From positions 1-64,000 of the IMG/VR virus record IMGVR_UViG_3300042261_002385: a stretch of DNA of 64,000 nt; one strand, given 5' to 3'. The stretch's first letter is position 1, and each line of letters begins with the position of its first letter. Of this stretch, positions 16,065-31,979 are shown in pieces. A model generated the notes under the pieces. It ran no database searches. It saw nothing but the letters and a program-made list of their open reading frames with translations, and had not been told where the DNA came from. The translations under genes were made by a program, and so were the position numbers.

Positions 16065-17060
16065 CTAAATCATTTTTTTTGAAATCCACTCATATGTTTT
16101 ACGTAATCCTTTTTCTAAAGGATAATTTATCTCATATCCGATTTTTTCAAAGAATAATTTATTATCAGATTTTCTACCCATTACTCCAATCGGACACTTA
16201 TGACCATATTTTTTTTCAAAATCCTCACCAAAAATGTTATTAATTTTGATGGATTTGTCTGCAATTTTAGAAACGATTTCGACCAATTGATTGATTGTAA
16301 CCATTTCTTCTGAACCAATGTTTACAGGACCAGTAAATTCCGAATTCATTAATTTATCAACTGCCGTCAAACATTCATCAATAAATAAGAAAGATCTTGT
16401 TTGAGTTCCATCACCCCAAATCTCAATCTCACCATTAGATTCTAGAACTTTTCTACAAACTGCTGCCGGTGCTTTTTCTTTTCCACCAGTCCAAGTCCCT
16501 TCAGGACCAAAGATGTTATGAAATCTAGCTATTCGAACATTTAGATTATAATTTCTCATATAAGCCAAGTATAATCTTTCACTGAATAATTTTTCCCAAC
16601 CATACTCGGAATCCGGATTAGCTGGATATGCTGAACTTTCCTCACAATTAGGATTATTCGGGTCTAATTGATTGTGCTCAGGATAAATACAAGCAGATGA
16701 AGAATAAAAAACTTTTTTTACTTTTGTCAAAACACACTCATTTACAACATTTAGATTTATCATAGCTGAATTATGCATGACATTAGCATCATTTTCACCT
16801 GTAAAGATGTAACCAGCACCTCCCATATCAGCTGCTAGTTGATAAACCTCATCAAATCCATTTTCAATATGGAAAACATCTTTAATAAAATTCAAATCTT
16901 TCAAATCTCCTTTGTAAAAATCATCACAAATAATATTATGTCCTAAATGCTCATGATTTTTTATATCAGCGATTCTCACATAAGAATTTTCACTTTTTAG
17001 TTTTCTACCAAGATGACCACCAATAAAGCCACCACCACCAAGTATTAAAATTTTTTTCAT
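16065..17060 (-). CDS. GDP-mannose 3,5-epimerase-like NAD-dependent epimerase
   Basis: GGGGFIG, LAADMGGAGYI, YSSSACIYP and AYPANPDSEYGWEKLFSER motifs. Confidence 0.85.
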   Translation of the reverse strand: MKKILILGGGGFIGGHLGRKLKSENSYVRIADIKNHEHLGHNIICDDFYKGDLKDLNFIKDVFHIENGFDEVYQLAADMGGAGYIFTGENDANVMHNSAMINLNVVNECVLTKVKKVFYSSSACIYPEHNQLDPNNPNCEESSAYPANPDSEYGWEKLFSERLYLAYMRNYNLNVRIARFHNIFGPEGTWTGGKEKAPAAVCRKVLESNGEIEIWGDGTQTRSFLFIDECLTAVDKLMNSEFTGPVNIGSEEMVTINQLVEIVSKIADKSIKINNIFGEDFEKKYGHKCPIGVMGRKSDNKLFFEKIGYEINYPLEKGLRKTYEWISKKMI

Positions 17061-17063
17061 TTT

Positions 17064-17996
17064 TTAAAATTGTTTTTTGTAAATTTTATAGAAATCTTTA
17101 GTTCTCTCAGGTAAATAAGACTCGAAATTACTTAAATCGTTAATCAATTTAAGAGTATTTCTATATCCAATAATCTCATTTTCTAAGTTCTTTATAAGAT
17201 CTTGAACATTTCTATCCTGATACACTGTAGCTTTTGAATAAGCCACTGAATTAGGAAAGTGATATTGAAGTATATAAGAAGCCCATATATCATCCATTCT
17301 GCCAATGAATGGAAATACACAATATACTGGTATGACATCTCTTGATAAAAAAGTATTCTGTGAATTAAATGGTGAAATAACATTTGAACAATAAGGTTCT
17401 TGTATATCAGAATATTTGACAATTGGCTTGAGAGTCAGTCGGGCCATTGCGTCTATATCAGGATCACCATCCCACAAATCAGCCTGAACAAGAATTTTTC
17501 TTTTTGTTTTACCTTTATATTGAACATTATGTCTTTTTTGTAGATACTCAATAGGATATCCTCTATGCCAAACGTAATTGTCTTTAGTTATAGATAACGG
17601 ATCAAATACATTTAGTTCAGGCTCATAAATATCCAACTCGACTTCTTTATTTACTAAAATGTTTTTACCCCAATCGTCATAAGGTATATTATCATCATCG
17701 ACAGTAGCTACTATTTCCGAACCAAGTTTGTAAGCTTCGACAAATCCAATATTTCTTCTTTGAATAGTGTTCCAACCAATTACTTCACTTAGTTCTGTGT
17801 ATTTTTCATCCTGTTGTTCAGGAGTCAAATATATGACATTTTTATACTTCGACTGAAGTTCTAAATATTCGGAATGTGGTGTTTTTTTATCTCCTATAAT
17901 TATAAAATTCCAACAATCATTTTCTGATATCTGACAGAATTTGAGTGTTGCCTCTGTTGGTTTATTTATCGTTGTAGTAACTATTGATTTAATCAT
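17064..17996 (-). CDS. STELLO/RGP (GT75)-like glycosyltransferase or mutase
   Basis: IVTTTIN, RRNIGF, TVDDDN, WHRGYP, GDPDIDAMARL, PFNSQNTF and RMDDIW motifs. Confidence 0.7.
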   Translation of the reverse strand: MIKSIVTTTINKPTEATLKFCQISENDCWNFIIIGDKKTPHSEYLELQSKYKNVIYLTPEQQDEKYTELSEVIGWNTIQRRNIGFVEAYKLGSEIVATVDDDNIPYDDWGKNILVNKEVELDIYEPELNVFDPLSITKDNYVWHRGYPIEYLQKRHNVQYKGKTKRKILVQADLWDGDPDIDAMARLTLKPIVKYSDIQEPYCSNVISPFNSQNTFLSRDVIPVYCVFPFIGRMDDIWASYILQYHFPNSVAYSKATVYQDRNVQDLIKNLENEIIGYRNTLKLINDLSNFESYLPERTKDFYKIYKKQF

Positions 17997-18005
17997 ATTT
18001 CTAAT

Positions 18006-18890
18006 TTAATTTTTGTAGATTATTACATCTTGCTCATTAATAAGACCCCATCCATCTTCATTAGCTTTAAATTTAGGAGCAACATTGGCTTGGTTATAAC
18101 CATTTACGTCTCCACCTATACCTTTGTGACATAAATGGAAAAAGGTCATGCCTAAGTCATACAAATCACCCATACATTTGTATTGTCTGGTGTATCTATT
18201 GTGCATTTCCACATCTACAAATCCCCATCTTGTTAATTCTTCGTAAAAAAAAGTTGACTCTTCACAGATTTTTCTACTGAGTAGAGTTCCAATTGCACCT
18301 CCTCCGAATTGAGAAAGGGAAATTTTGGAAAGTATAGGAAAAACACCATGATCTACTTCTATTGGAGGCCAGCAAGTTCTACCACTGGCTTCCCATTTTT
18401 CTATCTCTGTATCTAAATTTTTAATTCCGTCACAAGACTCATGTAATTTTTCACTGATATGCCATCTAGAAGCCCAATAGAACGCATTGTCATCAGATGT
18501 CAACAGCAGCTCATACATTTTTTTAAAGCTATCAAAAGGTATATAACCATCCGCATCTATGACTAATATAAATTTACCTTTAGATCTTCTAAAAGCCGCG
18601 TTAGCTGCATGTGAAGTAGAAAACGGAGAGTCTGTATATTTTCTACAAACTTCTTTTGGTATATAAACCCAGTTTAAAAAATCATTCTGATTAATTTCTA
18701 AATAATCCGATAATTTTATATCACTTCCCCAATCAGAAACTACTATTTCGATATCATTTGCTCCAAGTTTTGAGATATTATCAACTAGCTTACTTAAGTT
18801 AAGTTTTAGTCTGTGTGGAAAGTTTCCTAAATAATTGTCATTCCTACCATATGTTATAATAGAAAGTAAAATTTCTTTTTTTTCTGTCAT
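18006..18890 (-). CDS. GT-A fold (GT2-like) glycosyltransferase
   Basis: GRNDNY, IVVSDWGS, NAAFRRSKGKFILVIDADG and WGFVD motifs. Confidence 0.75.
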   Translation of the reverse strand: MTEKKEILLSIITYGRNDNYLGNFPHRLKLNLSKLVDNISKLGANDIEIVVSDWGSDIKLSDYLEINQNDFLNWVYIPKEVCRKYTDSPFSTSHAANAAFRRSKGKFILVIDADGYIPFDSFKKMYELLLTSDDNAFYWASRWHISEKLHESCDGIKNLDTEIEKWEASGRTCWPPIEVDHGVFPILSKISLSQFGGGAIGTLLSRKICEESTFFYEELTRWGFVDVEMHNRYTRQYKCMGDLYDLGMTFFHLCHKGIGGDVNGYNQANVAPKFKANEDGWGLINEQDVIIYKN

Positions 18891-18966
18891 TATGTTATTT
18901 TATTTTTTTCTTTCAAAAATTGAAAAACCACATCTATCCTGTAGGTCATCAACAATATTTGTCCAA

Positions 18967-19758
18967 TTATGTTTTATACTTATCCTTTATCTCATTCATT
19001 TTATTTATGAGTGTAAAATCATCAGTATATTCAATATTAAATTGTAGATTAGGTTTTCTAAAATGATGTATTCTAAGTTTATAGTCATCAATTCTATATT
19101 TCGAATCTATTAGCTCTTGTAAAGTCGCCTCTGTTCTACCTTCAATAAGTCTTAAATAATGAACATGAACGGCTTCATCCATTTTACTAGAAATGACTAA
19201 AGACTTATATCGGTTAAGTCCATATTCTTTAAATTTTAAAGAATCCCATCTTTTACTTGTTCTTTTATTTGTAGTATACCAATCACCTAATTCATAACCG
19301 TCATCTAAAACATCAAATGAATTTATAACTAATTGGTCTATGTTTCTATTTTTTAACTCATTTTCTATCGTAGTAGATATTTTCTCATCTAAATTAGATA
19401 CTAAAAATTCATCGACATCTACAAAAACTGATATTGCATCTGGATTTATAGACTTCACAATATTATTACCACTTGTAAAAGACCTTCTAATTCTATCACT
19501 AAGAGTTACATCTCCATGGTAAGACTCCGAATTTTTACAGTTTTCAAAAGAATATACATTGCCAAATCCATCAGACTTATTGATTATAATATTTATATTG
19601 TAAGAATCGCTTATTAATTTCATCTTCTCTACGGTATCGTCTTCAGATGAATCATCATACATTATAAAAGTGTCAAAACCTTGTTCATGGTGATATAATA
19701 ACCAATCTTTAATTCTATCAGATTGGTCTTTGAGTTGTGTTATAATTACATTTTTCAT
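18967..19758 (-). CDS. GT92/GT2-like glycosyltransferase
   Basis: WLLYHHEQGFDTFIMYDDSSED; FVDVDEFL. Confidence 0.7.
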   Translation of the reverse strand: MKNVIITQLKDQSDRIKDWLLYHHEQGFDTFIMYDDSSEDDTVEKMKLISDSYNINIIINKSDGFGNVYSFENCKNSESYHGDVTLSDRIRRSFTSGNNIVKSINPDAISVFVDVDEFLVSNLDEKISTTIENELKNRNIDQLVINSFDVLDDGYELGDWYTTNKRTSKRWDSLKFKEYGLNRYKSLVISSKMDEAVHVHYLRLIEGRTEATLQELIDSKYRIDDYKLRIHHFRKPNLQFNIEYTDDFTLINKMNEIKDKYKT

Positions 19759-20618
19759 AAATTTTTTTCCTTTAATTTTATATTGTTAAAAATTAATTCA
19801 CATCTTTTTTCGAAAGAATGGTTTTCTAATACATATTCACTAGCTCTTTTTGCGATATCTTCTCGTTCTTGTTCGTTTTCAAGATAATATTTTATCTTTT
19901 TTGATAAATCATCATCTGAATAATAAAACATTTTTGAAACGTCTTCATTATAATCTACAAACTTGTGAAAATTCTCGTTGTAGTTTGTAAGCATGAATGA
20001 ACCAGCTGCTATTATTTCAAAATATTTACTATTCATGTCGTAAGACATAGATAAATTAAAACATATTTTTGTTCTTTGCATCTCCTTTATGTAGTCATCA
20101 CCAAAAGCCATAAGGTGTTCAATTCCAAATTTTTCACACATAATTTTTCTTTCCGGAATCATTCCACCAATCAAAGCCAAATCTCTAGTTTTTTCACTAA
20201 TGTATCTTGGTCCATAATGTATTTTAGAAACCGCTAATGGCATCCAAAACGAATTAGGTAAATTATATCTCTCAAAATCTTCTTTGTTATTAAATGCGAC
20301 AAAGTCAATTTTACCCTGTTGAATAAATGGTCTATAATCAACAATGTGAGTATCTATTGCCCAGAACAATTTTGGTGTTTTAATCTTGCTCCAATCCCAC
20401 CATTTCCAATCACTATATGTCCAATAATTCTCAGTAATAATAACTAAATCATACAGATGTGCTACAAATGGAATTTCTATTTCTGATTTCTCACCATTTG
20501 GTCCATAAACATCACACTCATGTCCTAAATTTCTTAATGCATAACAGAACTCATAACCTTCTTTCCAATCAGAGTGTGGTTTACCCGCTAGTAATATATC
20601 AGCTACTAATATTTTCAT
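19755..20618 (-). CDS. CgeB-like GT-B glycosyltransferase
   Basis: FWAIDTH; KICFNLSMSYDMNSKYFEIIAAGSFMLT; YYLENEQEREDIA. Confidence 0.75.
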   Translation of the reverse strand: MKILVADILLAGKPHSDWKEGYEFCYALRNLGHECDVYGPNGEKSEIEIPFVAHLYDLVIITENYWTYSDWKWWDWSKIKTPKLFWAIDTHIVDYRPFIQQGKIDFVAFNNKEDFERYNLPNSFWMPLAVSKIHYGPRYISEKTRDLALIGGMIPERKIMCEKFGIEHLMAFGDDYIKEMQRTKICFNLSMSYDMNSKYFEIIAAGSFMLTNYNENFHKFVDYNEDVSKMFYYSDDDLSKKIKYYLENEQEREDIAKRASEYVLENHSFEKRCELIFNNIKLKEKNL

Positions 20619-20631
20619 ATTTTCTTTTATT

Positions 20632-21360
20632 TTATATTATTGTAACTCCTCTATGTTTTACAACCTCGGAAGCACATTTATTAGCAAAAATTATCGATTT
20701 ATGAATATCTCCACTTTTGAGAAATTCTATAACTAAACCCGACATAAAGCTATCACCAGCACCTGATGTATCTTTAACTTCTACTCTGTCAACTTTGTAT
20801 TTTTTTCCATTGAACTCACAACCATCACCACCCATTGTGTGTATTATTTTATGAGAAAATTCGTCTGTGATAAAATCTTTTGACTTATTGAACTCAAAAT
20901 CATTTATTTTGATAAATTTACAATCTTTTATCCAATTACCTAATATTTTTTTAGTATCAACAAAAACATTATCATGTTTAGCTGAAATAGATTGTATATC
21001 ACTTTCAGTAAGAAAACCCTTATTATAATCTGATATAACAATAATATCATAATCATAATTTATTTTTGATAAATCTATTCTTTCTATTTTATCATTTGAA
21101 TCAACTCTGAAAAACATATGGTTTGATTGGTCATGAACATATCTTGTTTTAGTAATATTATACCAATTATAGTTAGTAATTATGTCACACTCAATATATT
21201 GTTCTATATTTCTTTGAACGTTTTTCGCCATTCCTCCATTTTCTTGTTGATTTATAACATTCAATACAGGAACTGGTGCATCAGGACACAATCTATGAGC
21301 ATTACAGTAAACAAAAATGTCCCTACAACTTTCACCAATTATCAAAACTCTCTTCTTCAT
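20632..21360 (-). CDS. PfkB-family sugar kinase, HldE/RfaE1 heptose-kinase-like
   Basis: IIGESCRD...RLCPDAPVPV, GGMAKNV, SDYNKG and DTSGAGDSF motifs. Confidence 0.8.
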   Translation of the reverse strand: MKKRVLIIGESCRDIFVYCNAHRLCPDAPVPVLNVINQQENGGMAKNVQRNIEQYIECDIITNYNWYNITKTRYVHDQSNHMFFRVDSNDKIERIDLSKINYDYDIIVISDYNKGFLTESDIQSISAKHDNVFVDTKKILGNWIKDCKFIKINDFEFNKSKDFITDEFSHKIIHTMGGDGCEFNGKKYKVDRVEVKDTSGAGDSFMSGLVIEFLKSGDIHKSIIFANKCASEVVKHRGVTII

Positions 21361-21361
21361 T

Positions 21362-22420
21362 TTAAATAGTTTCTTTATCTTTTAGCAAGCTTTCAACTGT
21401 TTCTTTTGGTCCAAAATTTAATTCTTCAAAAGATAACTCTTCATTTAGTCGTTCTTTTCCAAAAATCTCTAAAATTCTATTAGCGATAGTGACCTTTGTA
21501 GGATAGTAGTGTTTTGTTAAATGATGAGATGTCGGAACTGGAACATTTGGTGCGGATACTTTACAGGGCTTATACTTAAGACTATCAAAAACTTCTGTAG
21601 TTATGTTTGATATTATTTCAGAACCAATACTAAACGCATCATTGCAAGTATCAACGGTCAGAATTCTACCAGTTTTCTTGACTGATTTGATTATAGAATC
21701 ATAGTCAATAGGATTCACACTTACTAAATCAATCAACTCAACATCAATACCAGTATTTTTAATCATATCAACCGCCTTCATTGAATCTATCAATCCATCA
21801 CCATAAGCGACAACAGTTATATCATTTCCCTCACAAACCACATTTACTTTGTCTAACGGTTTCTTAAAGTATTCTGTTGAAACATTCTGTTTCATTCCTT
21901 TTAACCATAGATGTTCTAAAATAATTACAGGGTTGTTATCCTCGACAGCTGATATTAATAAACCTTTGGCCATTTCGGGTGTCGATGGAATTACACATTT
22001 TAAACCAGTCGTGTTTCCAAACATCGAGTATAAAGACTGCGAGTGCTGAGGTCCAGTTCCCCATTGTCTTCCTACAACCAATCTAATTACAATTGGAACC
22101 GGATTATCACCCCCAAAACTGTAATTCCATTTAGAAGCCTGTGTTAAGTATGAATCAGCAGCGAATAGTCCAAATTCAACTCTATCATGATGTATTATAG
22201 GCCTCAAACCACCCAGAGCAGCACCAACACAGGCCATAGTTGTCGAAAATTCAGAGTTTGGAGTATCAAAAACTCTATCGGGGTGTATATTTTTCAAACC
22301 TGGAGCTGATACATAATTAGCACCTAATCCCATTATAAAGACTCTTGGGTCATTTTCAATTGATTGATGGATAGCTTCTTTTATAGCATCTCCGTAAGTA
22401 ATTTCTCTTTTATCTTTCAT
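21362..22420 (-). CDS. ThDP-dependent E1 beta-like subunit
   Basis: DTPNSE, GPQHSQ and DLVSVNPID motifs; start reassigned to ATG 22420 (MKDKREITY). Confidence 0.85.
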   Translation of the reverse strand: MKDKREITYGDAIKEAIHQSIENDPRVFIMGLGANYVSAPGLKNIHPDRVFDTPNSEFSTTMACVGAALGGLRPIIHHDRVEFGLFAADSYLTQASKWNYSFGGDNPVPIVIRLVVGRQWGTGPQHSQSLYSMFGNTTGLKCVIPSTPEMAKGLLISAVEDNNPVIILEHLWLKGMKQNVSTEYFKKPLDKVNVVCEGNDITVVAYGDGLIDSMKAVDMIKNTGIDVELIDLVSVNPIDYDSIIKSVKKTGRILTVDTCNDAFSIGSEIISNITTEVFDSLKYKPCKVSAPNVPVPTSHHLTKHYYPTKVTIANRILEIFGKERLNEELSFEELNFGPKETVESLLKDKETI

Positions 22421-25121: not shown

Positions 25122-25177
25122 TACATTTTTATTTTTTTATCATTCCGATTTCTTATGAATTTCAATGACATTTCAAA

Positions 25178-25855
25178 TTATCCGATTATATTTTTTATCA
25201 ATTTCCAATGGTCGGAATGTCTAACGTCATTTTCATCAAATATTTCACCAACGAATTCGTAATCAATTCTCTTAGTTGGAAAAGGTCTTATTTCTTGTCC
25301 AAATTTTAGATTGAACTCTGAATGCTCTAAAGATTTATCTTTGACAAATGGATAGATTACTTGACCTAAAAAATCTTGATCTATACCTTTTCTATGAAAT
25401 TGATTCCACTTTTCAATTGTTTGTGAAAAATTCACATTCCTTAATATACCATTTCGACATCCCCACATACCTCCCAGTATTGGAACAGTATGATATGGAT
25501 GATCTCTCATAATATGAAAGTCTTTATCTGATTCAAGCCACTCTTGTATGGCATTAAACTCTCTATCAGAAAACCTTGAATCACAATCTCTTGATAAATA
25601 TATGTCTACATCTGGTTCTTCAACAGCCCAGAATCTCCAGAACATACCATGAAATGAATCTTTTGATTTTACTAAAATCACTTCAACATTTTCGCCCTTT
25701 ATAGTGTCTATAAGTTCTTTATCAGAAGAATCATCTATGTAAAATCTACAAATCCAACCGGGAAAATATTTTGAAGCCAATTCTATATTTCTCAAAGCAC
25801 CAACCCAATACATAGGGTGATTGCCCCATAAAGAATAAGCAACTATATTTTTCAT
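25178..25855 (-). CDS. putative GT-A glycosyltransferase-like protein
   Basis: YSLWG, MFWRF, SRDCDSR (DxD), MRDHPYH and ILGGMWG motifs. Confidence 0.6.
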   Translation of the reverse strand: MKNIVAYSLWGNHPMYWVGALRNIELASKYFPGWICRFYIDDSSDKELIDTIKGENVEVILVKSKDSFHGMFWRFWAVEEPDVDIYLSRDCDSRFSDREFNAIQEWLESDKDFHIMRDHPYHTVPILGGMWGCRNGILRNVNFSQTIEKWNQFHRKGIDQDFLGQVIYPFVKDKSLEHSEFNLKFGQEIRPFPTKRIDYEFVGEIFDENDVRHSDHWKLIKNIIG

Positions 25856-26526
25856 TATATTTGGAAATCATTTTTTACAAAGACAGAATCCCACTGAATA
25901 TTTCCAAGAAGTCTATATCCTTTAGATTTTAAAAACTCTGTTTCTTTTTCTAATCCATAGTTGTTTTCTATAAGAAATAGTGTGATATCTACTTTATCAA
26001 AATTTATTGAATTTAGGACTTGTAGCTCAGCTCCTTCGACGTCAATTGATATAAAATCGATTGATTTTAAATCGTGTTTATCAAAAAGAGTCTCAAGTCT
26101 AACAGCCTTCATTGGAATTTCTTGACTTTTTGAAAAAAGTTCGTGGCCTTCGGGATATGATTTATACATTTCTAGCTCTCTATTAATTCTATCCAGATGT
26201 TGTGTATTGTAAAACTCCATAATACCACTAAGAACATTACAAGGACCTTCAATTGATAAAAAATTAATATCCATTTCTGTATCAGAAATAGCACAGTTTT
26301 CGAATACTGAATTAGGTCTTGGATGTTCATTTCTTTTGTTGTATTCTACTGGATTTGGTTCTATTAAAAGACCTTTCCAGTTTCTTTCTTTTTCAAAAAA
26401 CCAAGTATTAGAAGCTCCAAATCCATCAAGTGCTCCTACTTCTACGAAAACACCTTCAGTTTTACCTCTAAATATTTGTTGATCAAGAATTAAATCTTGT
26501 TGAATTTGTGATTTACTATTATTCAT
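25855..26526 (-). CDS. FkbM-family SAM methyltransferase
   Basis: FVEVGALDG, LLIEPNP and ISIDVEGAE motifs. Confidence 0.9.
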   Translation of the reverse strand: MNNSKSQIQQDLILDQQIFRGKTEGVFVEVGALDGFGASNTWFFEKERNWKGLLIEPNPVEYNKRNEHPRPNSVFENCAISDTEMDINFLSIEGPCNVLSGIMEFYNTQHLDRINRELEMYKSYPEGHELFSKSQEIPMKAVRLETLFDKHDLKSIDFISIDVEGAELQVLNSINFDKVDITLFLIENNYGLEKETEFLKSKGYRLLGNIQWDSVFVKNDFQI

Positions 26527-26530
26527 TTAT

Positions 26531-27358
26531 TTAGTCAAAAATTTTATACAAGAAAGATTTTATGTTTTCAATCTTATTATCTTCTGGAATATTATAGTCA
26601 TTGAACCAAGGTTGGTTTAACTTCTCCAAATATTTATCATCATTTTTATCAAGCTCAATTATGTATCCAATTAAGTCATCTTCACTATTAAAGTCATAAT
26701 AGTTTACAAAAGATTTAGTGTTAAACTCTTTACCAATTAGTGGATTACCCCAATATATTGGCATTGAATTGACTGTCATTGGTTCCATAATTTTTTCAGT
26801 AGTATAACCCGGATGCTCGGGTCTATACGCATTGTTTTCAAAAGATATTGTAAATTTATACTCTGATTGAAATTGTCTTTTATTTTGTACAGGTCCACCG
26901 ACGTTGTTCATAAATCTACCACCGGAATCAACTTTTTTATATTTTGATAACTTAGTAAAAAAACTATTTCTTCTGTCACAGTTACCATTTGAAACAACAA
27001 AATTGCAAAACTTTCTTTTTGCTAAATTCTTTTCTATCATTTTAGGATTTACTAAATCATAGTATCCATCATATAATAAATAATGTGGAAGACGATAATT
27101 TCTTGAATCATCTAAATAGTCAAAAGAAAAAGAGTAGTCACAATAATCTAAAGGTGGAGCAACGTTTTCTCCGGTATAGAATATTTTCTTACAATTGAGC
27201 TGTTGATGTTGATTACCAAATAAAGAAAAGAATAGATAGTCAGGATTATTTGAAATCTCAACGTCAAAATTTTCTTTAAGTAAATTATAAAAATAGTTGT
27301 CTGTTCTATTGAAACCTCCCCAAAAATCAGAGAAGTTTATTTTAATTTTTTTCTTCAT
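26531..27358 (-). CDS. GT10 alpha-1,3/4-fucosyltransferase-like
   Basis: YTGEN, RLPHY, FCNFVVSN, YKFTISFEN, YTTEKI and PIYWG motifs. Confidence 0.85.
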   Translation of the reverse strand: MKKKIKINFSDFWGGFNRTDNYFYNLLKENFDVEISNNPDYLFFSLFGNQHQQLNCKKIFYTGENVAPPLDYCDYSFSFDYLDDSRNYRLPHYLLYDGYYDLVNPKMIEKNLAKRKFCNFVVSNGNCDRRNSFFTKLSKYKKVDSGGRFMNNVGGPVQNKRQFQSEYKFTISFENNAYRPEHPGYTTEKIMEPMTVNSMPIYWGNPLIGKEFNTKSFVNYYDFNSEDDLIGYIIELDKNDDKYLEKLNQPWFNDYNIPEDNKIENIKSFLYKIFD

Positions 27359-27359
27359 A

Positions 27360-28061
27360 TTATACTAATATTCTTTTTTCAACTTCCATAAGTTTTCTTT
27401 TATTCCAAGTTATGTCATCCTCAGCCCATTTTGAATTATACGCTTGGTCAGCTTGGTCAGCATTTCTTTTACCAGCTGCATAATGAAGATGTTCAAATGT
27501 AGTCTCATCGTTTAATCTATCATCGTAAAGTAATCCTAAATCTTTTAAGTTCATGTATAACTCACAATCTGAGAACATATGATTATAAGCTGGATGATAT
27601 ATTGTCATATTTAGCTTTTTTAGACAACCATAAGTCATTATAGGTATAGTAATTGCAGCATGTAACATATTGGTAGAATCAGGTAGTTGATATCCATCTC
27701 TGACCATAAGCCCAACATCTCCTTTACCTTCTAATTTATTTACTAAATAAGTGTCCCAACCGTTGGGTGCTAAAAAATCATCTGATGCAAAAACAACTAT
27801 ATCACTATCATTACAACTTCCCATCTTGACACCTAAGTTTGAAGACAGTTGATATGATGGAAAACAAACTCCAATTTTGTTTGTATTGAGTGTAATAAGA
27901 AAATTATTTTTTAAATATTCTTTTAACTCAGAAGCATGTTGTTCCCAGTTGACAGCAACATAAGTCTGTATATTTTGTGGATTGTCAGCTCTCTTAATCC
28001 ATTCAGAGTGCATTTCTTTGAATTGAGCTGGTCTTAAAGTGCACCATAAGATATGTATCAT
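27360..28061 (-). CDS. putative GT2-like glycosyltransferase
   Basis: ASDDF DxD-like motif; YHPAYNHMFSDCEL; FEHLH. Confidence 0.6.
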   Translation of the reverse strand: MIHILWCTLRPAQFKEMHSEWIKRADNPQNIQTYVAVNWEQHASELKEYLKNNFLITLNTNKIGVCFPSYQLSSNLGVKMGSCNDSDIVVFASDDFLAPNGWDTYLVNKLEGKGDVGLMVRDGYQLPDSTNMLHAAITIPIMTYGCLKKLNMTIYHPAYNHMFSDCELYMNLKDLGLLYDDRLNDETTFEHLHYAAGKRNADQADQAYNSKWAEDDITWNKRKLMEVEKRILV

Positions 28062-29158: not shown

Positions 29159-29160
29159 AC

Positions 29161-30198
29161 TTATTTTTGATTTTTTATATCATTAATAATCATCAATTTG
29201 ACAAGTTGCTCAAATTTAATTTTAGGTTGCCATCCTAATATATTTTTAGCTTTTGTATAATCACCAAGTAAAATATTTACTTCAGCTGGTCTGTAGTATT
29301 TTTCATCTACTTCTATGATTGTCAATCCGTTATCTAAAATACCTCTTTCAGAAACTCCTTCTCCAACCCAATTGATATTCCATCCACATTCTTTACAAGC
29401 TAATTCGACAAACTCTTTTATAGTATGAGTTTCTCCGGTGGCTAAAACATAATCATCACCTACTTCTTGTTGAAGCATCATCCACATTCCCTCTACAAAA
29501 TCTTTTGCGTGACCCCAGTCTCTCTTAGAATAAAGATTACCTAATTTCAAAATAGGAAAATCTTGACGACCTTCATCTAAGTACTTTTTGATTTTAGCAA
29601 GTCCTAATGTAATTTTTCTAGTAACAAACGTTTCACCTCTTCTTTCACCTTCATGATTAAATAATATACCATTACTAATGTGCATACCGTATGATTCTCT
29701 ATAGTTTTTTGTAATCCAAAGTCCATAAATTTTTGCAACACCATAAGGGCTTCTAGGATGCATTGGTGAAACTTCTGTATATCCAGATTCAGGCATGTTA
29801 TAACCCATACCCCCATATAATTCAGAAGTTGATGCTTGATAAACTTTTGATTTAGGACAGTGGTTTTTTACAGCCTCTAATATAGATAGTGTTCCAAGTC
29901 CATCACACTGAGCAGTATAATAAGGTATTTCAAAACTTACTTTAACATGAGATTGAGCAGCCAAGTTATAAACTTCATCTGGTTGTATTTGTGAAACAAG
30001 ATTAGAAATTACTAATGGATCAGTAACATCTCCGTAATGAAGTGTGAGTTTATCAAAGATGTGGTCTATTCTATCGGTATTAAACGTAGAAGTTCTTCTT
30101 ATAATACCATGCACTTCGTAATCTTTTTCTAGTAATAATTCAGCAAGATGAGATCCATCCATACCTGTAATTCCTGTAATTAGTGCGATTTTTTTCAT
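29161..30198 (-). CDS. gmd: GDP-mannose 4,6-dehydratase
   Basis: ITGITGMDG, LAAQSHVKVSF, QASTSELYG, SPYGVAK and FNHE..RRGETFVTRK motifs. Confidence 0.97.
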   Translation of the reverse strand: MKKIALITGITGMDGSHLAELLLEKDYEVHGIIRRTSTFNTDRIDHIFDKLTLHYGDVTDPLVISNLVSQIQPDEVYNLAAQSHVKVSFEIPYYTAQCDGLGTLSILEAVKNHCPKSKVYQASTSELYGGMGYNMPESGYTEVSPMHPRSPYGVAKIYGLWITKNYRESYGMHISNGILFNHEGERRGETFVTRKITLGLAKIKKYLDEGRQDFPILKLGNLYSKRDWGHAKDFVEGMWMMLQQEVGDDYVLATGETHTIKEFVELACKECGWNINWVGEGVSERGILDNGLTIIEVDEKYYRPAEVNILLGDYTKAKNILGWQPKIKFEQLVKLMIINDIKNQK

Positions 30199-30199
30199 T

Positions 30200-31069
30200 T
30201 TATATTTTAGTTTTTATATAATCTTTTAGATTTTGTTTAGCAGACCAACCTATTCTATAAAAGGTTTCTTCCCAATTAGATTCGGTGTGAAGTCCTTCAT
30301 TTCTTCTGAGTGGTGTAAATTTAATCTTAGAATCATCATTTTTTACAATCATCATAGCCAAGTCAATAATTTTGATAGGATTTCCCATACCTAAATCAAA
30401 GTTATCAGCTTTCCACTCTCCTTCACTTATCTTTATCAAACCATCACAAATATCATTTACTGATGTAAAATCTCTTGATTGTTGACCATCACCAACTACA
30501 GTCAATTTTTGACCACTTCTCATTTGAGACAAGAATTTAGCAACAACAGTAGCCCATTCACCTTTATTTGGCTCGCGGTTACCGTAAACATTATAGAAGG
30601 TGGCCATAGCACAGTTTAATCCATAACACTCAGCATACATTTTTAAAACACCTTCTCCTACTACTTTTGAAAAAGTGTATGGGCTAATATAATCAGAGCC
30701 ATGATTCTTAGAAGATGTTGTTGAGTATACAACAATACCTGAATCGGATTTGTGTGCGAATTCCATAATTTTCATAGTCCCAAGTGCATTAGACTCAAAC
30801 CACTGCATTGGATCATCAAATGAAGGTTGGATTCTAGCTTCAGCAGCTAAATGAAATATTCTATCATATCTTTTGCCTTTTAAGACATCAAAAATGTGTA
30901 AGATGTCTGATACATAATATTTGGCTTTGGAATTTTTATAATCAATTGAAGATGAGGTAGAACTTAAGTTATCCAGCACATCGACTTCGAATCCTAAGTC
31001 AACTAACTTATCAACTAAATTCGAACCAACAAAACCAAGACCACCAGTTACTAAAACTTTATTTGACAT
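30200..31069 (-). CDS. NAD-dependent epimerase/dehydratase (extended SDR)
   Basis: TGGLGFVGS, HLAA, SPYTFSK (YxxxK), NVYG and RDFT motifs. Confidence 0.85.
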   Translation of the reverse strand: MSNKVLVTGGLGFVGSNLVDKLVDLGFEVDVLDNLSSTSSSIDYKNSKAKYYVSDILHIFDVLKGKRYDRIFHLAAEARIQPSFDDPMQWFESNALGTMKIMEFAHKSDSGIVVYSTTSSKNHGSDYISPYTFSKVVGEGVLKMYAECYGLNCAMATFYNVYGNREPNKGEWATVVAKFLSQMRSGQKLTVVGDGQQSRDFTSVNDICDGLIKISEGEWKADNFDLGMGNPIKIIDLAMMIVKNDDSKIKFTPLRRNEGLHTESNWEETFYRIGWSAKQNLKDYIKTKI

Positions 31070-31979
31070 ACTCTGCGTAAGTTCTTTCTAATCCTTCTCT
31101 TAAAGGTGTTTTATAAACCCAACCTAATTCCTTTAATTTAGAAACGTCAGATAATTTCTTTGGAGTGCCATCTGGCTTGTCTGTATTGAAATAAATATCA
31201 CCTTGGAATCCAATAACATCTTTGACTAAATAGGACAATTCTTTAATTGTTAAATATTCACCTGTTCCAATATTTACTATTTCAGATGAATCATAATTTT
31301 GCATAAGATAGACACAAGCATCAGCTAAATCATCGACATACAAAAATTCTCTCATAGGTGTTCCTGTTCCCCAGATTTCAACTACATCTCTATTTTCAAT
31401 TTTAGCTTCATGAAATTTTCTAATAAGGGCTGGTAAAACGTGTGAGTTATTTAAGTCGTAATTATCGTTTGGTCCATATAAATTTGTTGGCATAACTGAA
31501 ATAAAATTATCACCATATTGTTTATTGAAATCCTGACACATTTTTATACCAGATATTTTAGCTATCGCATAAGCATCATTAGTTGGTTCTAACAAACCAG
31601 TCAAAAGATATTCTTCTTTTATTGGCTGTGAACTTAATTTTGGATAAATACAAGTGGAACCTAAAAAGAGTAACTTTTTACAATGGTTATCATGAGCTGC
31701 TTTGATGATATTTGATTGTATCATTATATTCTCATAGATAAAGTCAGCTCTAAAATCATCATTAGCTTTTATACCACCGACTTTTGCGGCAGCTAAAAAA
31801 ACATACTCAGGCTTTTCAAAGTGAAAAAAATGATTTACTTGAAACTGATTTGTCAAATTCACCTCTTTTCTGGATTTTGTTATTATGTTAGTAAATCCTA
31901 ACTCTTTGAGTTTTCTTACTATTGCTGAACCGACCATTCCATTATGACCAGCTACATAAATTTTTGAATCTTTATTCAT
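31059..31979 (-). CDS. fcl: GDP-L-fucose synthase
   Basis: AGHNGMVGSA, AAAKVGGI, LGSTCIYP, YAIAK, PTNLYGPNDN, SHVLPAL and REFLYVDD motifs. Confidence 0.97.
   Translation of the reverse strand: MNKDSKIYVAGHNGMVGSAIVRKLKELGFTNIITKSRKEVNLTNQFQVNHFFHFEKPEYVFLAAAKVGGIKANDDFRADFIYENIMIQSNIIKAAHDNHCKKLLFLGSTCIYPKLSSQPIKEEYLLTGLLEPTNDAYAIAKISGIKMCQDFNKQYGDNFISVMPTNLYGPNDNYDLNNSHVLPALIRKFHEAKIENRDVVEIWGTGTPMREFLYVDDLADACVYLMQNYDSSEIVNIGTGEYLTIKELSYLVKDVIGFQGDIYFNTDKPDGTPKKLSDVSKLKELGWVYKTPLREGLERTYAEYVK

What the first reader, a model, noticed from the sequence alone, without database searches (positions are those of the whole stretch)
16065..31979. 18-gene, 16-kb phage glycan-synthesis island abutting structural genes
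Seen: one minus-strand block with gmd, fcl, glf, a GME-like epimerase, a further SDR, an HldE-type kinase, FkbM and about eight glycosyltransferase-like genes, with its own phage-type promoters. Established: Gmd plus Fcl make GDP-L-fucose, Glf makes UDP-Galf, and GME makes GDP-L-galactose/L-gulose. Inference: the island builds a complex phage-specified glycan for virion glycosylation, host-surface remodelling (receptor masking), or an anchor for the T9SS cargo. No flippase or polymerase is present, which favours direct protein (virion) glycosylation.
Basis: partly seen in the sequence, partly recalled or inferred. Interest (0 to 1): 0.6.

Follow-up and report, generated by a model that had tools for sequence, protein, structure and literature searches.

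The report
Variable sugar-coat gene island in huge phage
A giant bacterial virus carries 18 adjacent genes that make several rare activated sugars and join them into a virus-specific glycan, at a genome position where related giant phages carry quite different sugar genes.

Summary
Window 16065-31979 carries 18 tightly packed minus-strand genes, all sugar-related.

The record is a T4-like huge phage: 436 kb, cut from a 522-kb contig. It has gp23, gp32 and gp13 homologues and 28 tRNAs. The island is phage DNA, not host DNA.

The island encodes:
- Gmd and Fcl, which make GDP-L-fucose.
- A GME homologue next to a GT75 (MtdL-like) NDP-pyranose mutase, which I predict makes GDP-L-galactofuranose or GDP-L-fucofuranose.
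- A GalE-like enzyme and Glf, which make UDP-galactofuranose.
- An FkbM methyltransferase.
- Seven glycosyltransferases: GT10 fucosyltransferase, GT9-like, GT-A with DxD, three GT2-like, and a GT-B half.
It recurs in 8 viral contigs, in the cultured cyanophages S-SM2 and P-TIM68, and in more than 30 Patescibacteria genomes.

All 18 proteins look soluble. The phage record has no priming transferase, flippase, polymerase or sugar-1-phosphate nucleotidyltransferase (PF00483).

Related 635-642 kb phages keep the flanking genes but carry different glycan genes between them, so this is a hypervariable, serotype-like locus.

Cytoplasmic glycosylation of virion proteins is the most likely role (about 0.45). 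Remodelling of host envelope glycans is second (about 0.3). No acceptor was identified.

The parts
31059..31979 (-). fcl: GDP-L-fucose synthase (GDP-4-keto-6-deoxymannose 3,5-epimerase/4-reductase)
   Evidence: NF047922, 484.6 bits, full length, just under the 500-bit cut-off; Pfam Epimerase
30200..31069 (-). GalE-like extended SDR; probably a UDP-hexose 4-epimerase that feeds Glf
   Evidence: Best solved relatives are UDP-glucose 4-epimerases (4zrm, 6e-32). No equivalog cut-off is reached.
29161..30198 (-). gmd: GDP-mannose 4,6-dehydratase
   Evidence: TIGR01472, 466 bits against a cut-off of 415; PF16363, 429 bits
28058..29158 (-). glf: UDP-galactopyranose mutase (FAD-dependent)
   Evidence: TIGR00031, 412 bits against a cut-off of 304; PF03275 plus NAD_binding_8
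27360..28061 (-). Candidate glycosyltransferase of a virus-only family (GT2-like)
   Evidence: phrog_14945 glycosyltransferase, 2.9e-5. ESM Atlas neighbours are viral clusters, some with PF00535 (a lead only). Homologues at 77-88% identity sit in the same position in related phages.
26531..27358 (-). GT10 alpha-1,3-fucosyltransferase
   Evidence: PF18025 FucT_N (90.9 bits) plus PF00852 GT10 (73.6 bits), both over their cut-offs
25855..26526 (-). FkbM-family SAM methyltransferase; probably methylates a sugar
   Evidence: PF05050, 71.5 bits; TIGR01444
25178..25855 (-). GT-A fold glycosyltransferase with an invariant D-x-D (D90, D92); CAZy family unresolved
   Evidence: AlphaFold2 model, pLDDT 67.5. 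Foldseek matches LgtC and glycogenin, E 1e-5. VIA Z 10-11 to several GT-A families. Conserved beside the cassette in 4 viral loci.
24441..25121 (-). Compact (226 aa) GT-B glycosyltransferase, GT9 (heptosyltransferase)-like
   Evidence: AlphaFold2 model, pLDDT 82.7, pTM 0.82. In an unbiased VIA search the GT9 chains rank at the top: 3tov Z 11.3, WaaF Z 11.1, TibC Z 9.8, WaaC Z 9.4; other GT-B chains reach 7.8 or less. Linked to the cassette in 24 loci.
23402..24439 (-). Zn-dependent medium-chain alcohol dehydrogenase; predicted ketoreductase of the module
   Evidence: PF08240 plus PF00107. 50-65% identical orthologues in 39 cassette loci. 62% identical to S-SM2 gp197.
22410..23393 (-). PDH/acetoin-dehydrogenase-type E1 alpha (ThDP-binding subunit)
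   Evidence: PF00676, 195 bits; TIGR03182, 269 bits, below the 394-bit cut-off
21362..22468 (-). E1 beta subunit. The listed GTG start overlaps E1 alpha by 59 bp, so the true start is probably about 22.40-22.42 kb.
   Evidence: PF02779 plus PF02780. Closest solved structure is G. stearothermophilus PDH E1 beta, 1w85_B, 5.5e-50, with the His128-beta equivalent retained. Homologues are 343-366 aa.
20632..21360 (-). Short (242 aa) PfkB-family sugar kinase of the HldE/RfaE domain-I type
   Evidence: TIGR02198, 94 bits, below the equivalog cut-off; PF00294. The DTSGAGD catalytic motif is invariant. 62% identical to the S-SM2 'carbohydrate kinase'.
19755..20618 (-). Glycosyltransferase with a GT-B C-terminal domain (Glyco_trans_1_2)
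   Evidence: PF13524, 78.6 bits against a cut-off of 25
18967..19758 (-). GT2_4 / GT92-like glycosyltransferase
   Evidence: PF13704, 41.1 bits; PF01697, 26.2 bits; both over their cut-offs
18006..18890 (-). GT2 glycosyltransferase
   Evidence: PF00535, 32.5 bits against a cut-off of 23.3
17064..17996 (-). GT75-like Mn-dependent NDP-pyranose mutase homologue (MtdL/Hyg20 type). Predicted to convert GDP-L-Galp to GDP-L-Galf, or GDP-L-Fucp to GDP-L-Fucf.
   Evidence: A family profile matches MtdL structures 7XPR/7YUA at E 1.6e-23 over about 240 residues. The DDD motif, Arg159, Asp195, Ser228/Gln229, Arg257 and Asp260 equivalents are invariant. His287 is Gln and Asp87 is Ile (residue roles from PMC9937993). 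No Pfam hit. 7176 homologues.
16065..17060 (-). GDP-mannose 3,5-epimerase (GME) homologue
   Evidence: Full-length match to Arabidopsis GME 2c59, 1.1e-90, 307 bits; the next-best family reaches only 84 bits. A GT75-homologue/GME gene pair is also adjacent in an unrelated phage contig (L145, 67% identity).
32010..32041 (.). Terminator-like hairpin between the ClpB-like gene and fcl; marks the upstream edge of the island
   Evidence: 13-pair stem with T-runs on both strands
46193..46615 (-). HldE domain-II-like (cytidylyltransferase-fold) nucleotidyltransferase, 14 kb outside the island. A possible partner of the kinase; the link is unproven.
   Evidence: PF01467, 59.5 bits. phrog_7878 'heptose 7-P kinase/heptose 1-P adenylyltransferase', 2.6e-38, full length. 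26-33% identical to the nucleotidyltransferases that sit next to the cassette in other loci. Its own neighbour is a cREC_REC gene.
32044..34176 (-). ClpB-like AAA+ chaperone; conserved right flank of the variable locus
   Evidence: Pfam AAA_2, AAA_lid_9, ClpB_D2-small. 83-94% identical in related huge phages.
13392..16061 (+). 688-aa and 199-aa proteins of unknown function; conserved left flank of the variable locus
   Evidence: No family or solved relative. 65-79% identical in LR745206 and LR756502 and 78% in the nearest IMG/VR relative.

Best explanation
The island is a phage-encoded, cytoplasmic glycan-assembly line in a T4-like huge phage of the clade that holds the 635-735 kb 'uncultured phage' genomes. 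The host is probably a member of the Bacteroidota.

It draws on host GDP-mannose, UDP-glucose or UDP-galactose, pyruvate and probably a heptose phosphate. From these it makes at least four unusual donors:
1. GDP-L-fucose, from Gmd and Fcl.
2. GDP-L-galactose from GME, then contracted to GDP-L-galactofuranose (and/or GDP-L-fucofuranose) by the adjacent GT75 mutase.
3. UDP-galactofuranose, from the GalE-like enzyme and Glf.
4. A modified higher-carbon sugar from the conserved module of Zn-ADH, E1 alpha/beta and HldE-type kinase.

For donor 4 the most likely chemistry is as follows. The ThDP enzyme transfers a two-carbon acetyl unit from pyruvate onto a keto-sugar nucleotide, for instance the 4-keto product of Gmd or a heptose analogue. 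The ADH then reduces the acetyl branch to a 1-hydroxyethyl branch. This follows the AviB1/AviB2, Pau11/Pau12 and YerE branched-octose pathways.

Seven soluble glycosyltransferases and an FkbM methyltransferase then build a methylated, fucose- and furanose-containing heteroglycan. Among them are a GT10 fucosyltransferase and a GT9-like enzyme linked to the module.

The phage has no priming transferase, flippase, polymerase or ligase, and all enzymes look soluble. The most likely acceptors are therefore phage proteins glycosylated in the cytoplasm before or during assembly, giving a virion glycan coat. The locus sits between conserved flanks and its gene content is swapped wholesale among close relatives, so it behaves like a serotype locus under diversifying selection.

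Shown: gene identities, conservation of the module, variability of the locus, and absence of export genes. Inferred: the sugar products of donors 2 and 4, the order of transferases, and the acceptor.
For: - Gene identities.
- GT75 mutase homology: profile E 1.6e-23 with six of eight functionally tested MtdL residues conserved (PMC9937993). The GT75/GME gene pair recurs in another phage.
- Module conservation: the ADH, E1 alpha, E1 beta and kinase genes lie in the same order in 8 IMG/VR contigs and in more than 30 Patescibacteria genomes. The same module occurs in the cultured cyanophages S-SM2 and P-TIM68, inside clusters with epimerases, an HldE-II nucleotidyltransferase, a cupin, a phosphoheptose isomerase and glycosyltransferases.
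- In the nearest phage relative the ADH is 88% identical, but E1 alpha/beta is replaced at the same position by a fused E1_dh plus Transket_pyr protein of only about 30% identity. That is a functional replacement.
- Precedent: an E1 alpha/beta-like pair attaches a two-carbon branch to a sugar using pyruvate, and a separate ketoreductase follows (PMC4753412).
- g10 is GT9-like (Z 11.3, 11.1, 9.8, 9.4 for GT9 chains against 7.8 or less for other GT-B chains). GT9 includes TibC, a protein heptosyltransferase.
- No predicted membrane segment in any of the 18 proteins.
- The 436-kb record has no Bac_transf, Glycos_transf_4, Wzx, Wzy_C or NTP_transferase.
- Hypervariable locus: the same ClpB-like and 199/688-aa flanks in LR745206 and LR756502 enclose GT6, GT11, Polysacc_synt_2, formyltransferase, C-methyltransferase and deacetylase genes instead. 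About 25 other relatives carry partial or different sets.
- Virus-encoded virion glycosylation is established for chloroviruses and giant viruses (PMC9614988) and for mycobacteriophages (Freeman 2023, as cited in PMC12619734).
Against: - No acceptor protein was identified, and there are no expression or glycoproteomic data.
- The island is about 235 kb from the capsid gene, and its immediate neighbours are not recognisable structural genes.
- Many bacterial O-antigen and core glycosyltransferases are also soluble and act on lipid-linked acceptors, so lack of membrane segments does not exclude use of the host's lipid carrier, flippase and ligase.
- The chemistry of the ThDP/ADH module is argued by analogy only.
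- The His128-beta equivalent of lipoyl-dependent E1 is retained, so classical E1 chemistry is not excluded.
- The phage lacks a GmhA-type isomerase. Its only HldE-II-like nucleotidyltransferase lies 14 kb away, beside an unrelated-looking gene.
- In the GT75 homologue the Mn-binding His287 is Gln and Asp87 is Ile.
Confidence: 0.45

Rival explanations
1. Remodelling of the host envelope. The soluble phage transferases act on the host's own undecaprenyl-linked intermediates (O-antigen or LPS core, capsule, or the general Bacteroidota protein O-glycan). Host flippase, ligase or oligosaccharyltransferase then export the altered glycan. This changes the infected cell's surface to block superinfection or adsorption of progeny.
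For: The related heptose and LPS-like clusters of T4-like cyanophages are conventionally annotated as lipopolysaccharide synthesis genes (PMC7378029). Soluble GT9, GT2 and GT10 enzymes normally act on lipid-linked or LPS acceptors. The phage lacks only the membrane steps, which every host supplies. A locus that varies among relatives could track host serotype.
Against: No phage-encoded priming, flipping or ligating step is present. Host flippases and ligases are often selective for the native unit. Known phage seroconversion uses membrane-embedded Gtr-type or acetyltransferase modules, which are absent here. An 18-gene de novo pathway is large for a surface change in a cell that will lyse.
Confidence: 0.3
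2. The Zn-ADH / E1 alpha-beta part is not glycan chemistry but an auxiliary fermentative or central-carbon module (pyruvate to acetaldehyde or acetoin to alcohol). It happens to sit in the island, and the rest of the island still builds a glycan.
For: The E1 subunits are closest to genuine PDH E1 and keep the His128-beta equivalent. The ADH is a generic Zn-MDR. Patescibacteria, where the module is common, are fermentative (my knowledge).
Against: In 29-39 of 43 loci the ADH and E1 genes are contiguous with an HldE-type sugar kinase. They are often also next to a GT9-like transferase, a nucleotidyltransferase, a cupin, SDRs and methyltransferases. In cyanophages the module is embedded in a nucleotide-sugar cluster. 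No E2 is present in the phage record. The fused variant lacks the Transketolase_C domain.
Confidence: 0.12
3. DNA hypermodification. The glycan, or part of it (for example the heptose-type sugar), is attached to modified bases of the phage genome, as in phage clusters that put hexose, HexNAc or heptose on 5-hydroxymethylcytosine.
For: Phage clusters with a kinase-like enzyme, a cytidylyltransferase and a GT-B transferase put mono- and di-heptose on 5hmC (bioRxiv 10.1101/2023.12.21.572611). This phage has a ThyA-family gene, a DNA methylase and a QueC-like gene near the HldE-II-like nucleotidyltransferase.
Against: The ThyA-family gene is about 190 kb away and scores like a true thymidylate synthase (331 bits). 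No TET/JBP hit was found, although the control did not ring. The best folds for g10 are GT9, not T4 beta-glucosyltransferase. Seven transferases, a fucosyltransferase and furanose donors go far beyond any known DNA glycan.
Confidence: 0.05
4. The island is host DNA: a provirus flank, chimeric assembly or very recent host capture, and not a functional phage locus.
For: IMG/VR classes the record as a 'provirus'. It was trimmed from a 522,324-bp contig about 86 kb to the left of the window. The trimmed part holds bacterial-looking genes: a TonB-dependent receptor, a T9SS-tail protein, DnaJ and GrpE.
Against: The island is 16 kb inside the retained part, between gp13-like, RNR and gp32-like genes and ClpB plus tRNA genes. 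Both flanks are syntenic inside 635-642 kb phage genomes. GC is continuous at about 0.30 across the island and across the trim point. LR745206 also encodes a TonB-dependent-receptor-like gene. Several island genes belong to virus-dominated families.
Confidence: 0.02

Closest known systems
LPS- and heptose-type gene clusters of T4-like cyanomyoviruses (S-SM2 gp191-213, P-TIM68 gp181-197)
   Same: They share the same Zn-ADH, ThDP enzyme and HldE-type kinase module (ADH 57-62% and kinase 50-62% identical), embedded among nucleotide-sugar epimerases and glycosyltransferases. A GME homologue is found in S-SM2 (50% identical). An HldE-II nucleotidyltransferase is shared too, although in this phage it lies 14 kb outside the island. 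All are T4-like phages.
   Different: The cyanophages use a single fused ThDP protein ('transketolase central region') and carry phosphoheptose isomerase and cupin genes that this phage lacks. No Gmd/Fcl, Glf or GT75-mutase homologue was found in the fetched stretches of those clusters, and only a weak (25% identity) GT10 match in S-SM2. The function of the cyanophage clusters is itself untested.
Virus-encoded virion glycosylation in chloroviruses and Megavirinae (PBCV-1 GMD/GMER and A064R; clade-specific Mimivirus glycan clusters)
   Same: The virus makes its own nucleotide sugars, including GDP-L-fucose by Gmd plus an Fcl-type enzyme. Soluble virus glycosyltransferases and a methyltransferase decorate capsid or fibril proteins in the cytoplasm. 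Gene sets differ between clades (PMC9614988, PMC5408694). The g11 model also matches PBCV-1 A64R among other GT-A folds.
   Different: Those are eukaryotic giant viruses with experimentally solved glycans. Here the virus is a tailed phage and no glycan or acceptor is known. Furanose mutases and the ThDP module are additional.
Mycobacteriophage virion glycosylation (Freeman et al. 2023, as cited in PMC12619734)
   Same: Phage-encoded glycosyltransferases modify capsid and tail-tube subunits.
   Different: Those phages carry one or two transferases next to the structural genes and use host sugar donors. Here an 18-gene island with four donor pathways lies far from the capsid gene.
A201A and hygromycin A sugar pathways (MtdL, Hyg20)
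   Same: A GT75 Mn-dependent mutase acts on GDP-L-galactose or GDP-L-fucose to give the furanose donor (PMC9937993). Here a GME homologue and a GT75 homologue are adjacent, and Gmd and Fcl are also present.
   Different: Those are actinomycete antibiotic pathways. The phage protein is shorter (310 against about 377 aa), lacks the His287 and Asp87 equivalents, and belongs to a very large (more than 7000 members), highly conserved, mostly viral family.
Branched-octose pathways: AviB1/AviB2 (avilamycin), Pau11/Pau12 plus Pau7 (paulomycin), YerE (yersiniose)
   Same: A PDH-E1-alpha/beta-like pair, or another ThDP enzyme, uses pyruvate to attach a C-acetyl branch to a keto-sugar, and a separate ketoreductase makes the hydroxyethyl branch (PMC4753412). 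Here E1 alpha/beta and a reductase sit in a sugar cluster that also makes a 4-keto sugar through Gmd.
   Different: The reductase here is a Zn-MDR, not an AKR. The module is always linked to an HldE-type kinase. No direct sequence comparison or biochemistry exists.
Bacterial O-antigen and capsule loci
   Same: A block of donor-synthesis and transferase genes lies between conserved flanking genes, and the block is exchanged among close relatives.
   Different: There is no priming transferase, Wzx, Wzy, ligase or ABC transporter anywhere in the phage record.

Membership tests
GDP-L-fucose de novo pathway (Gmd + Fcl) | GDP-mannose 4,6-dehydratase at equivalog level | tested here: met
   TIGR01472, 466.1 bits against a cut-off of 415
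GDP-L-fucose de novo pathway (Gmd + Fcl) | GDP-L-fucose synthase at equivalog level | tested here: inconclusive
   NF047922, 484.6 bits, full length, just under the 500-bit cut-off
UDP-galactopyranose mutase (Glf) | Equivalog-level match with an N-terminal FAD-binding Rossmann domain | tested here: met
   TIGR00031, 412.3 bits against a cut-off of 303.75; PF03275 plus PF13450
GDP-mannose 3,5-epimerase (GME) | Full-length similarity to solved GME, clearly above other SDR families | tested here: met
   2c59 at 1.1e-90 (307 bits, residues 3-329); the next family reaches 84 bits. Catalytic residues and activity were not examined.
GT75 NDP-pyranose mutase (MtdL/Hyg20/RGP) | DDD metal/diphosphate motif, nucleophilic Arg159, Asp195, Ser228/Gln229, Arg257 and base Asp260 | tested here: met
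   The equivalents D100-D102, R145, D180, S212/Q213, R233 and D236 are invariant in 11 family members. Residue roles are from PMC9937993.
GT75 NDP-pyranose mutase (MtdL/Hyg20/RGP) | Mn-coordinating His287 and sugar-contact Asp87 | tested here: not met
   His287 aligns with the invariant Gln260, and Asp87 with the invariant Ile78. The mutated position Ser91 in plant AtRGP2 probably corresponds to Asp87, so that position may vary within GT75 (PMC9937993; the correspondence is my inference).
GT75 NDP-pyranose mutase (MtdL/Hyg20/RGP) | Match to the Pfam RGP or STELLO model | tested here: not met
   No Pfam hit even at E 10. The only links are the ESM Atlas lead and the profile match to PDB at E 1.6e-23. 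I file it as GT75-like, not as a proven member.
Pyruvate dehydrogenase complex E1 (alpha2beta2) | E1 alpha and E1 beta at equivalog level | tested here: not met
   TIGR03182, 268.9 bits against 393.85; NF006667, 233 bits against 321
Pyruvate dehydrogenase complex E1 (alpha2beta2) | Partner E2 acyltransferase | tested here: not met
   No PF00198 in the 436-kb record; the control rang in 10 of 14 genomes. A host E2 cannot be excluded.
Pyruvate dehydrogenase complex E1 (alpha2beta2) | His128-beta, proton donor for lipoyl reduction (role recalled from memory) | tested here: met
   It aligns with a His in the phage E1 beta, so this residue does not discriminate.
AviB1/AviB2-type two-carbon branched-sugar synthase | E1 alpha/beta-like pair inside a sugar-nucleotide cluster, together with a keto-sugar source and a ketoreductase | tested here: met
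   Context only: Gmd, SDRs and the ADH are in the same block. Linkage is conserved in 29-39 of 43 loci.
AviB1/AviB2-type two-carbon branched-sugar synthase | Closer in sequence to AviB1/AviB2 than to metabolic E1; acetyl transfer to an NDP-keto-sugar | not testable with these tools
   No AviB or Pau sequences were available from the tools. Biochemistry is required.
NDP-heptose pathway (GmhA, HldE kinase, GmhB, HldE nucleotidyltransferase) | Heptose-7-phosphate kinase | tested here: inconclusive
   The best family is TIGR02198 rfaE_dom_I, but at 94 bits against a cut-off of 345. The protein is shortened (242 aa) and the GAGD motif is intact.
NDP-heptose pathway (GmhA, HldE kinase, GmhB, HldE nucleotidyltransferase) | Phosphoheptose isomerase | tested here: not met
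   No SIS_2 hit in the record, and no tblastn hit with the cyanophage isomerases. The isomerase is present in 4 of 8 viral cassette loci and in none of 36 Patescibacteria loci.
NDP-heptose pathway (GmhA, HldE kinase, GmhB, HldE nucleotidyltransferase) | Heptose-1-phosphate nucleotidyltransferase | tested here: inconclusive
   An HldE-II-like gene at 46193-46615 (phrog_7878, 2.6e-38) lies 14 kb from the island, beside a cREC_REC gene.
GT10 alpha-1,3-fucosyltransferase | FucT N-terminal domain plus the GT10 catalytic domain | tested here: met
   PF18025, 90.9 bits; PF00852, 73.6 bits
GT9 heptosyltransferase | GT-B fold closest to GT9 structures | tested here: met
   Z 11.3, 11.1, 9.8 and 9.4 for 3tov, WaaF, TibC and WaaC; other GT-B chains reach 7.8 or less. 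No sequence-level match. At 226 aa it is much shorter than GT9 enzymes. The donor is unknown.
Wzx/Wzy- or ABC-dependent O-antigen/capsule locus | Priming phosphoglycosyltransferase, flippase, and polymerase or ligase | tested here: not met
   PF02397, PF00953, PF01943 and PF04932 are absent from the whole record, with positive controls.
Phage DNA-glycosylation cluster (5hmC glycans) | Adjacent C5-methyltransferase/5mYOX or dCMP hydroxymethylase, and a T4 BGT-like transferase | tested here: not met
   None lies in or beside the island. The ThyA-family gene is at 208 kb. The Tet_JBP search found nothing, but its control did not ring. g10 resembles GT9, not BGT.
T4-like (Straboviridae/Kyanoviridae-related) huge phage | gp23 capsid, gp32 SSB and gp13 neck homologues | tested here: met
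   PF07068, 95.4 bits, at 267-269 kb; phrog_224 and PF08804 gp32; PF26809 gp13 at 763-1563

The most novel reading that the evidence does not exclude
Huge T4-like phages of this clade carry an O-antigen-like serotype locus. A swappable block of donor-synthesis and transferase genes sits between fixed flanks and clothes the virion in a strain-specific glycan. The glycan is built from rare sugars: L-galactofuranose or L-fucofuranose made by a previously unrecognised, very large viral branch of GT75 mutases, and a C2-branched heptose-type sugar made by a ThDP/ADH/kinase module shared only with cyanophages and Patescibacteria. Phage particles would then have glycan serotypes under diversifying selection, and the module would define a new sugar pathway.
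Probability: 0.25. Interest if true: 0.8.

Novelty: new variant of a known kind. Interest (0 to 1): 0.62.

Why it matters
- Virus-encoded glycosylation is well documented for giant eukaryotic viruses and for a few mycobacteriophages, but not for environmental huge phages. A hypervariable, serotype-like glycan locus at a fixed genome position would point to strong selection on a phage-made surface glycan. Possible drivers are grazers, lectin-type defences, adsorption to non-hosts, or competition between phages. It would also give a marker for typing these uncultured phages.
- The GME plus GT75 pair suggests that thousands of conserved phage proteins now labelled 'hypothetical' or 'membrane protein' are NDP-hexofuranose mutases. 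That would greatly enlarge a CAZy family with only two characterised bacterial members.
- The ADH / E1 / kinase module links T4-like phages and Patescibacteria through an uncharacterised sugar pathway that can be tested directly in vitro.

Tried and rejected
- Megablast of the island against 50,697 phage records found only a 335-bp, 72% match in cyanophage S-T4, which turned out to be the g02 family.
- Pfam at E 10 gave nothing for g02, g10, g11 and g14.
- Sequence-profile searches of PDB gave nothing for g10 and g11, so fold prediction was needed.
- Promoter evidence. The sigma-70-type scan is not above shuffles, and the T4 late motif TATAAATA is not enriched in the window. Six sense-strand copies lie inside the island, two of them 17-24 nt upstream of the E1 alpha and ADH start codons. 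The A-rich coding strand makes this weak, so I draw no conclusion about timing.
- The His128-beta test for lipoyl-dependent E1 chemistry did not discriminate, because the residue is retained.
- The Tet_JBP search is uninformative, because the control did not ring.
- Not run: complex prediction (no specific protein pair is claimed to bind) and the large representative-protein search.
- Rejected: that the island is host DNA. See the fifth rival explanation.
- Rejected: that E1 alpha/beta belongs to a complete PDH complex. There is no E2 and the scores are below equivalog level.
- Host assignment to Bacteroidota rests only on T9SS-type domains and the low GC. The assignment of LR7565xx and LR745206 to the 'Mahaphage' clade is from my memory of Al-Shayeb et al. 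2020.

Full report
**What is there.** Window 16065-31979 holds exactly 18 ORFs on the minus strand. They are separated by 76 bp or less, or overlap by a few bases. The one larger overlap, 59 bp between E1 beta and E1 alpha, comes from an upstream GTG; homologues are 343-366 aa, so the true start is probably downstream. A terminator-like hairpin at 32010-32041 separates the block from the ClpB-like gene upstream. At its other end the block meets a plus-strand gene, stop to stop. GC is 0.29-0.32, the same as the rest of the genome.

**Whose DNA it is.**
- The window is bases 1-64000 of a 436,265-bp IMG/VR record.
- The record encodes a gp23-type capsid protein at 267-269 kb, a gp32-type SSB and an RNR small subunit, a gp13-type neck protein at 763-1563 and 28 tRNAs.
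- The 'provirus' label arises because the record was cut from a 522,324-bp metagenome contig about 86 kb left of the window.
- The trimmed part holds bacterial-looking genes: a TonB-dependent receptor, a T9SS-tail protein, DnaJ and GrpE. GC is continuous across the cut. A 635-kb phage genome, LR745206, also encodes a TonB-dependent-receptor-like gene. The cut may therefore be an artefact.
- The island lies 16 kb inside the retained part. Its two flanks recur in the same arrangement inside the 635-kb and 642-kb phage genomes LR745206 and LR756502: the ClpB-like gene at 80-83% identity, and the 199-aa and 688-aa genes at 65-79%.
- The refutation test 'the island maps to host DNA' therefore fails.

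**Gene content: standard donor pathways.**
- Gmd and Glf pass NCBIfam equivalog cut-offs. Fcl falls just short at 484.6 against 500 bits.
- g01 (16065-17060) is a full-length homologue of plant GDP-mannose 3,5-epimerase (2c59, 1e-90). No other SDR family comes close.
- g17 (30200-31069) is closest to UDP-glucose 4-epimerases and could supply UDP-galactose to Glf.
- g13 is a two-domain GT10 alpha-1,3-fucosyltransferase and g12 is an FkbM methyltransferase.
- g03, g04 and g05 pass Pfam cut-offs for GT2, GT2_4/GT92 and Glyco_trans_1_2.

**Gene content: the four ORFs with no family hit.**
- g10 folds confidently (pLDDT 82.7). In a search of 48,161 chains that did not rely on Foldseek, the GT9 enzymes rank at the top: Z 11.3, 11.1, 9.8 and 9.4 for 3tov, WaaF, TibC and WaaC. 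Other GT-B enzymes reach 7.8 or less.
- g11 is a GT-A fold with an invariant DxD; its family is unresolved.
- g14 belongs to a virus-only family with a weak glycosyltransferase PHROG match.
- g02 is not a transferase. A profile of its family matches the GT75 NDP-pyranose mutase MtdL at E 1.6e-23. The DDD motif and the Arg159, Asp195, Ser228/Gln229, Arg257 and Asp260 equivalents are invariant. His287 is Gln and Asp87 is Ile.
- MtdL and Hyg20 convert GDP-L-galactopyranose and GDP-L-fucopyranose to the furanose forms (PMC9937993). g02 sits next to the GME homologue, and the same gene pair is adjacent in an unrelated phage contig. The pair most likely makes GDP-L-galactofuranose from GDP-mannose.
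- The g02 family has 7176 detectable members, and the top 120 are 65-84% identical. One copy is annotated 'putative membrane protein' in a cyanophage.

- Genes g09-g06 encode a Zn-dependent alcohol dehydrogenase, PDH-type E1 alpha and E1 beta, and a shortened PfkB kinase. The kinase's best family is the heptose-7-phosphate kinase domain of HldE, and its catalytic motif is intact.
- This four-gene order recurs in 8 IMG/VR contigs at 51-77% identity and in more than 30 Patescibacteria genomes. The GT9-like g10 accompanies it in 24 loci.
- In some loci, including the nearest phage relative (ADH 88% identical), the two E1 genes are replaced at the same position by a fused E1_dh plus Transket_pyr protein of only about 30% identity. 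That points to a functional unit in which the ThDP enzyme can be exchanged.
- The cultured cyanomyoviruses S-SM2 and P-TIM68 carry the module (ADH 57-62% and kinase 50-62% identical). There it sits within clusters annotated with nucleotide-sugar epimerases, an HldE-II nucleotidyltransferase, a cupin, a phosphoheptose isomerase and glycosyltransferases.
- Related loci often add a CTP_transf_like nucleotidyltransferase, a small cupin and methyltransferases.
- This phage has an HldE-II-like nucleotidyltransferase at 46193-46615 (phrog_7878, 2.6e-38). It lies 14 kb away, beside a cREC_REC gene.
- This phage has no GmhA-type isomerase and no E2.

**What the module probably does.**
- By analogy with AviB1/AviB2, Pau11/Pau12 plus Pau7, and YerE (PMC4753412), the most economical reading is this. 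The ThDP enzyme adds an acetyl unit from pyruvate to a keto-sugar nucleotide, and the ADH reduces it to a hydroxyethyl branch.
- The kinase, with a nucleotidyltransferase, would provide the activated heptose-type backbone. Alternatively the Gmd product serves as the acceptor.
- This is inference. A DXS/TarJ-like route to a deoxy-ketose or alditol phosphate, or plain pyruvate fermentation, is not excluded.
- The His128-beta equivalent of lipoyl-dependent E1 is retained.

**Where the glycan goes.**
- None of the 18 proteins has a predicted transmembrane segment (maximum 19-residue Kyte-Doolittle mean is below 1.6).
- The whole record lacks both families of priming phosphoglycosyltransferase, Wzx, Wzy/ligase and PF00483 nucleotidyltransferases, each search with positive controls.
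- No paralogues of island genes occur elsewhere in the genome.
- The phage therefore depends on host GDP-mannose and UDP-hexose. It has no export route of its own.
- This fits cytoplasmic glycosylation of phage proteins, as in chloroviruses and Megavirinae (PMC9614988) and mycobacteriophages (cited in PMC12619734). GT9 includes cytoplasmic protein heptosyltransferases such as TibC.
- It does not exclude action on host lipid-linked intermediates, since many O-antigen and core transferases are also soluble.
- DNA glycosylation has a precedent that includes heptose (bioRxiv 10.1101/2023.12.21.572611), but nothing in or beside the island links it to base modification.

**A hypervariable locus.**
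- Among about 90 related viral loci recovered with the ClpB-like gene, 26 carry subsets of the island directly downstream of it. Fcl, Gmd, g14, GT10, FkbM and g11 occur in varying combinations.
- The nearest relative has Fcl-Gmd-g14-GT10-FkbM-g11-g10-ADH-ThDP-kinase but lacks Glf and g17.
- In LR745206 the same flanks enclose GT6, GT11, a Polysacc_synt_2 dehydratase, a formyltransferase, a sugar C-methyltransferase, a deacetylase and other SDRs. Almost none of this phage's island genes has a homologue there; the only hit is a weak (28% identity) Gmd-like match.
- This is the pattern of an O-antigen or capsule locus and suggests diversifying selection on the product.

**Verdict.**
The biosynthetic reading is well supported and can be sharpened considerably.
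- The acceptor remains open. Virion or phage-protein glycosylation is favoured at about 0.45. Host-envelope remodelling is at about 0.3.
- It is a new variant of a known kind: virus-encoded glycan clusters.
- Three features deserve follow-up: the serotype-like variability in huge phages, the viral GT75 mutase family paired with GME, and the ADH/E1/kinase module shared with cyanophages and Patescibacteria.

Noticed in passing
L153:1-9935 (source contig Ga0451520_0000008, about 76.7-86.7 kb, left of window base 1): The IMG/VR record was trimmed from a 522-kb contig. The trimmed side holds a 933-aa TonB-dependent receptor, a T9SS-tail beta-helix protein, GrpE, DnaJ and a TonB_C protein, at the same GC (about 0.30). 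The 635-kb phage LR745206 also has a TonB-dependent-receptor-like gene (29% identity). The 'provirus' call may be an artefact, and the phage may be about 520 kb.
   Followed up: partly
window 37118-37204 (-): ARAGORN reports a tRNA with a four-base anticodon (agta) next to a tRNA-Met. It could be a frameshift-suppressor-like tRNA, an intron-containing tRNA or a mis-call.
   Followed up: no
window 45801-46615 (-): An HldE-II-like nucleotidyltransferase sits directly upstream of a cREC_REC (cyclic-phosphate processing receiver) gene. A DNA N6/N4 methylase (42478-43227) and a QueC-like gene (47748-48449) lie nearby. This may be a separate nucleotide or DNA-modification cluster.
   Followed up: partly
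G000:C1:266593-267321 (-), outside the window: A 242-aa protein with 29% Ser+Thr lies immediately downstream of the gp23-like capsid gene. It is a candidate decoration protein and a possible O-glycosylation acceptor.
   Followed up: no
window 55533-61772 (+): A 1729-aa protein with six CHU_C-associated Ig-like domains is followed by a protein with an ALK/LTK-type glycine-rich domain. They lie in a stretch of raised GC (0.39-0.41 against 0.30).
   Followed up: no
G000:C1:290001-300000, outside the window: One 10-kb bin has GC 0.44 against a genome mean of about 0.31. It was not examined.
   Followed up: no
L143:2993-3673 and L143:14960-15808 (LR745206): The equivalent locus of a 635-kb phage encodes a GT6 (ABO/alpha-Gal-type) and a GT11 (alpha-1,2-fucosyltransferase) enzyme. 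With the GT10 found here, these are histo-blood-group-type transferase families in huge phages.
   Followed up: partly
L012-L047 (Patescibacteria genomes): The short HldE-type kinase with ADH and E1 genes was found in bacterial genomes almost exclusively in Patescibacteria/CPR lineages (Kaiserbacteria, Paceibacterota, Saccharibacteria, Parcubacteria). This phage-CPR sharing pattern is unexplained.
   Followed up: partly
window 48929-50344 (-) and 51680-52924 (-): A 471-aa protein with a class-I glutamine amidotransferase domain and a 414-aa M28 peptidase-like protein lie among tRNA clusters. Their roles are unknown.
   Followed up: no
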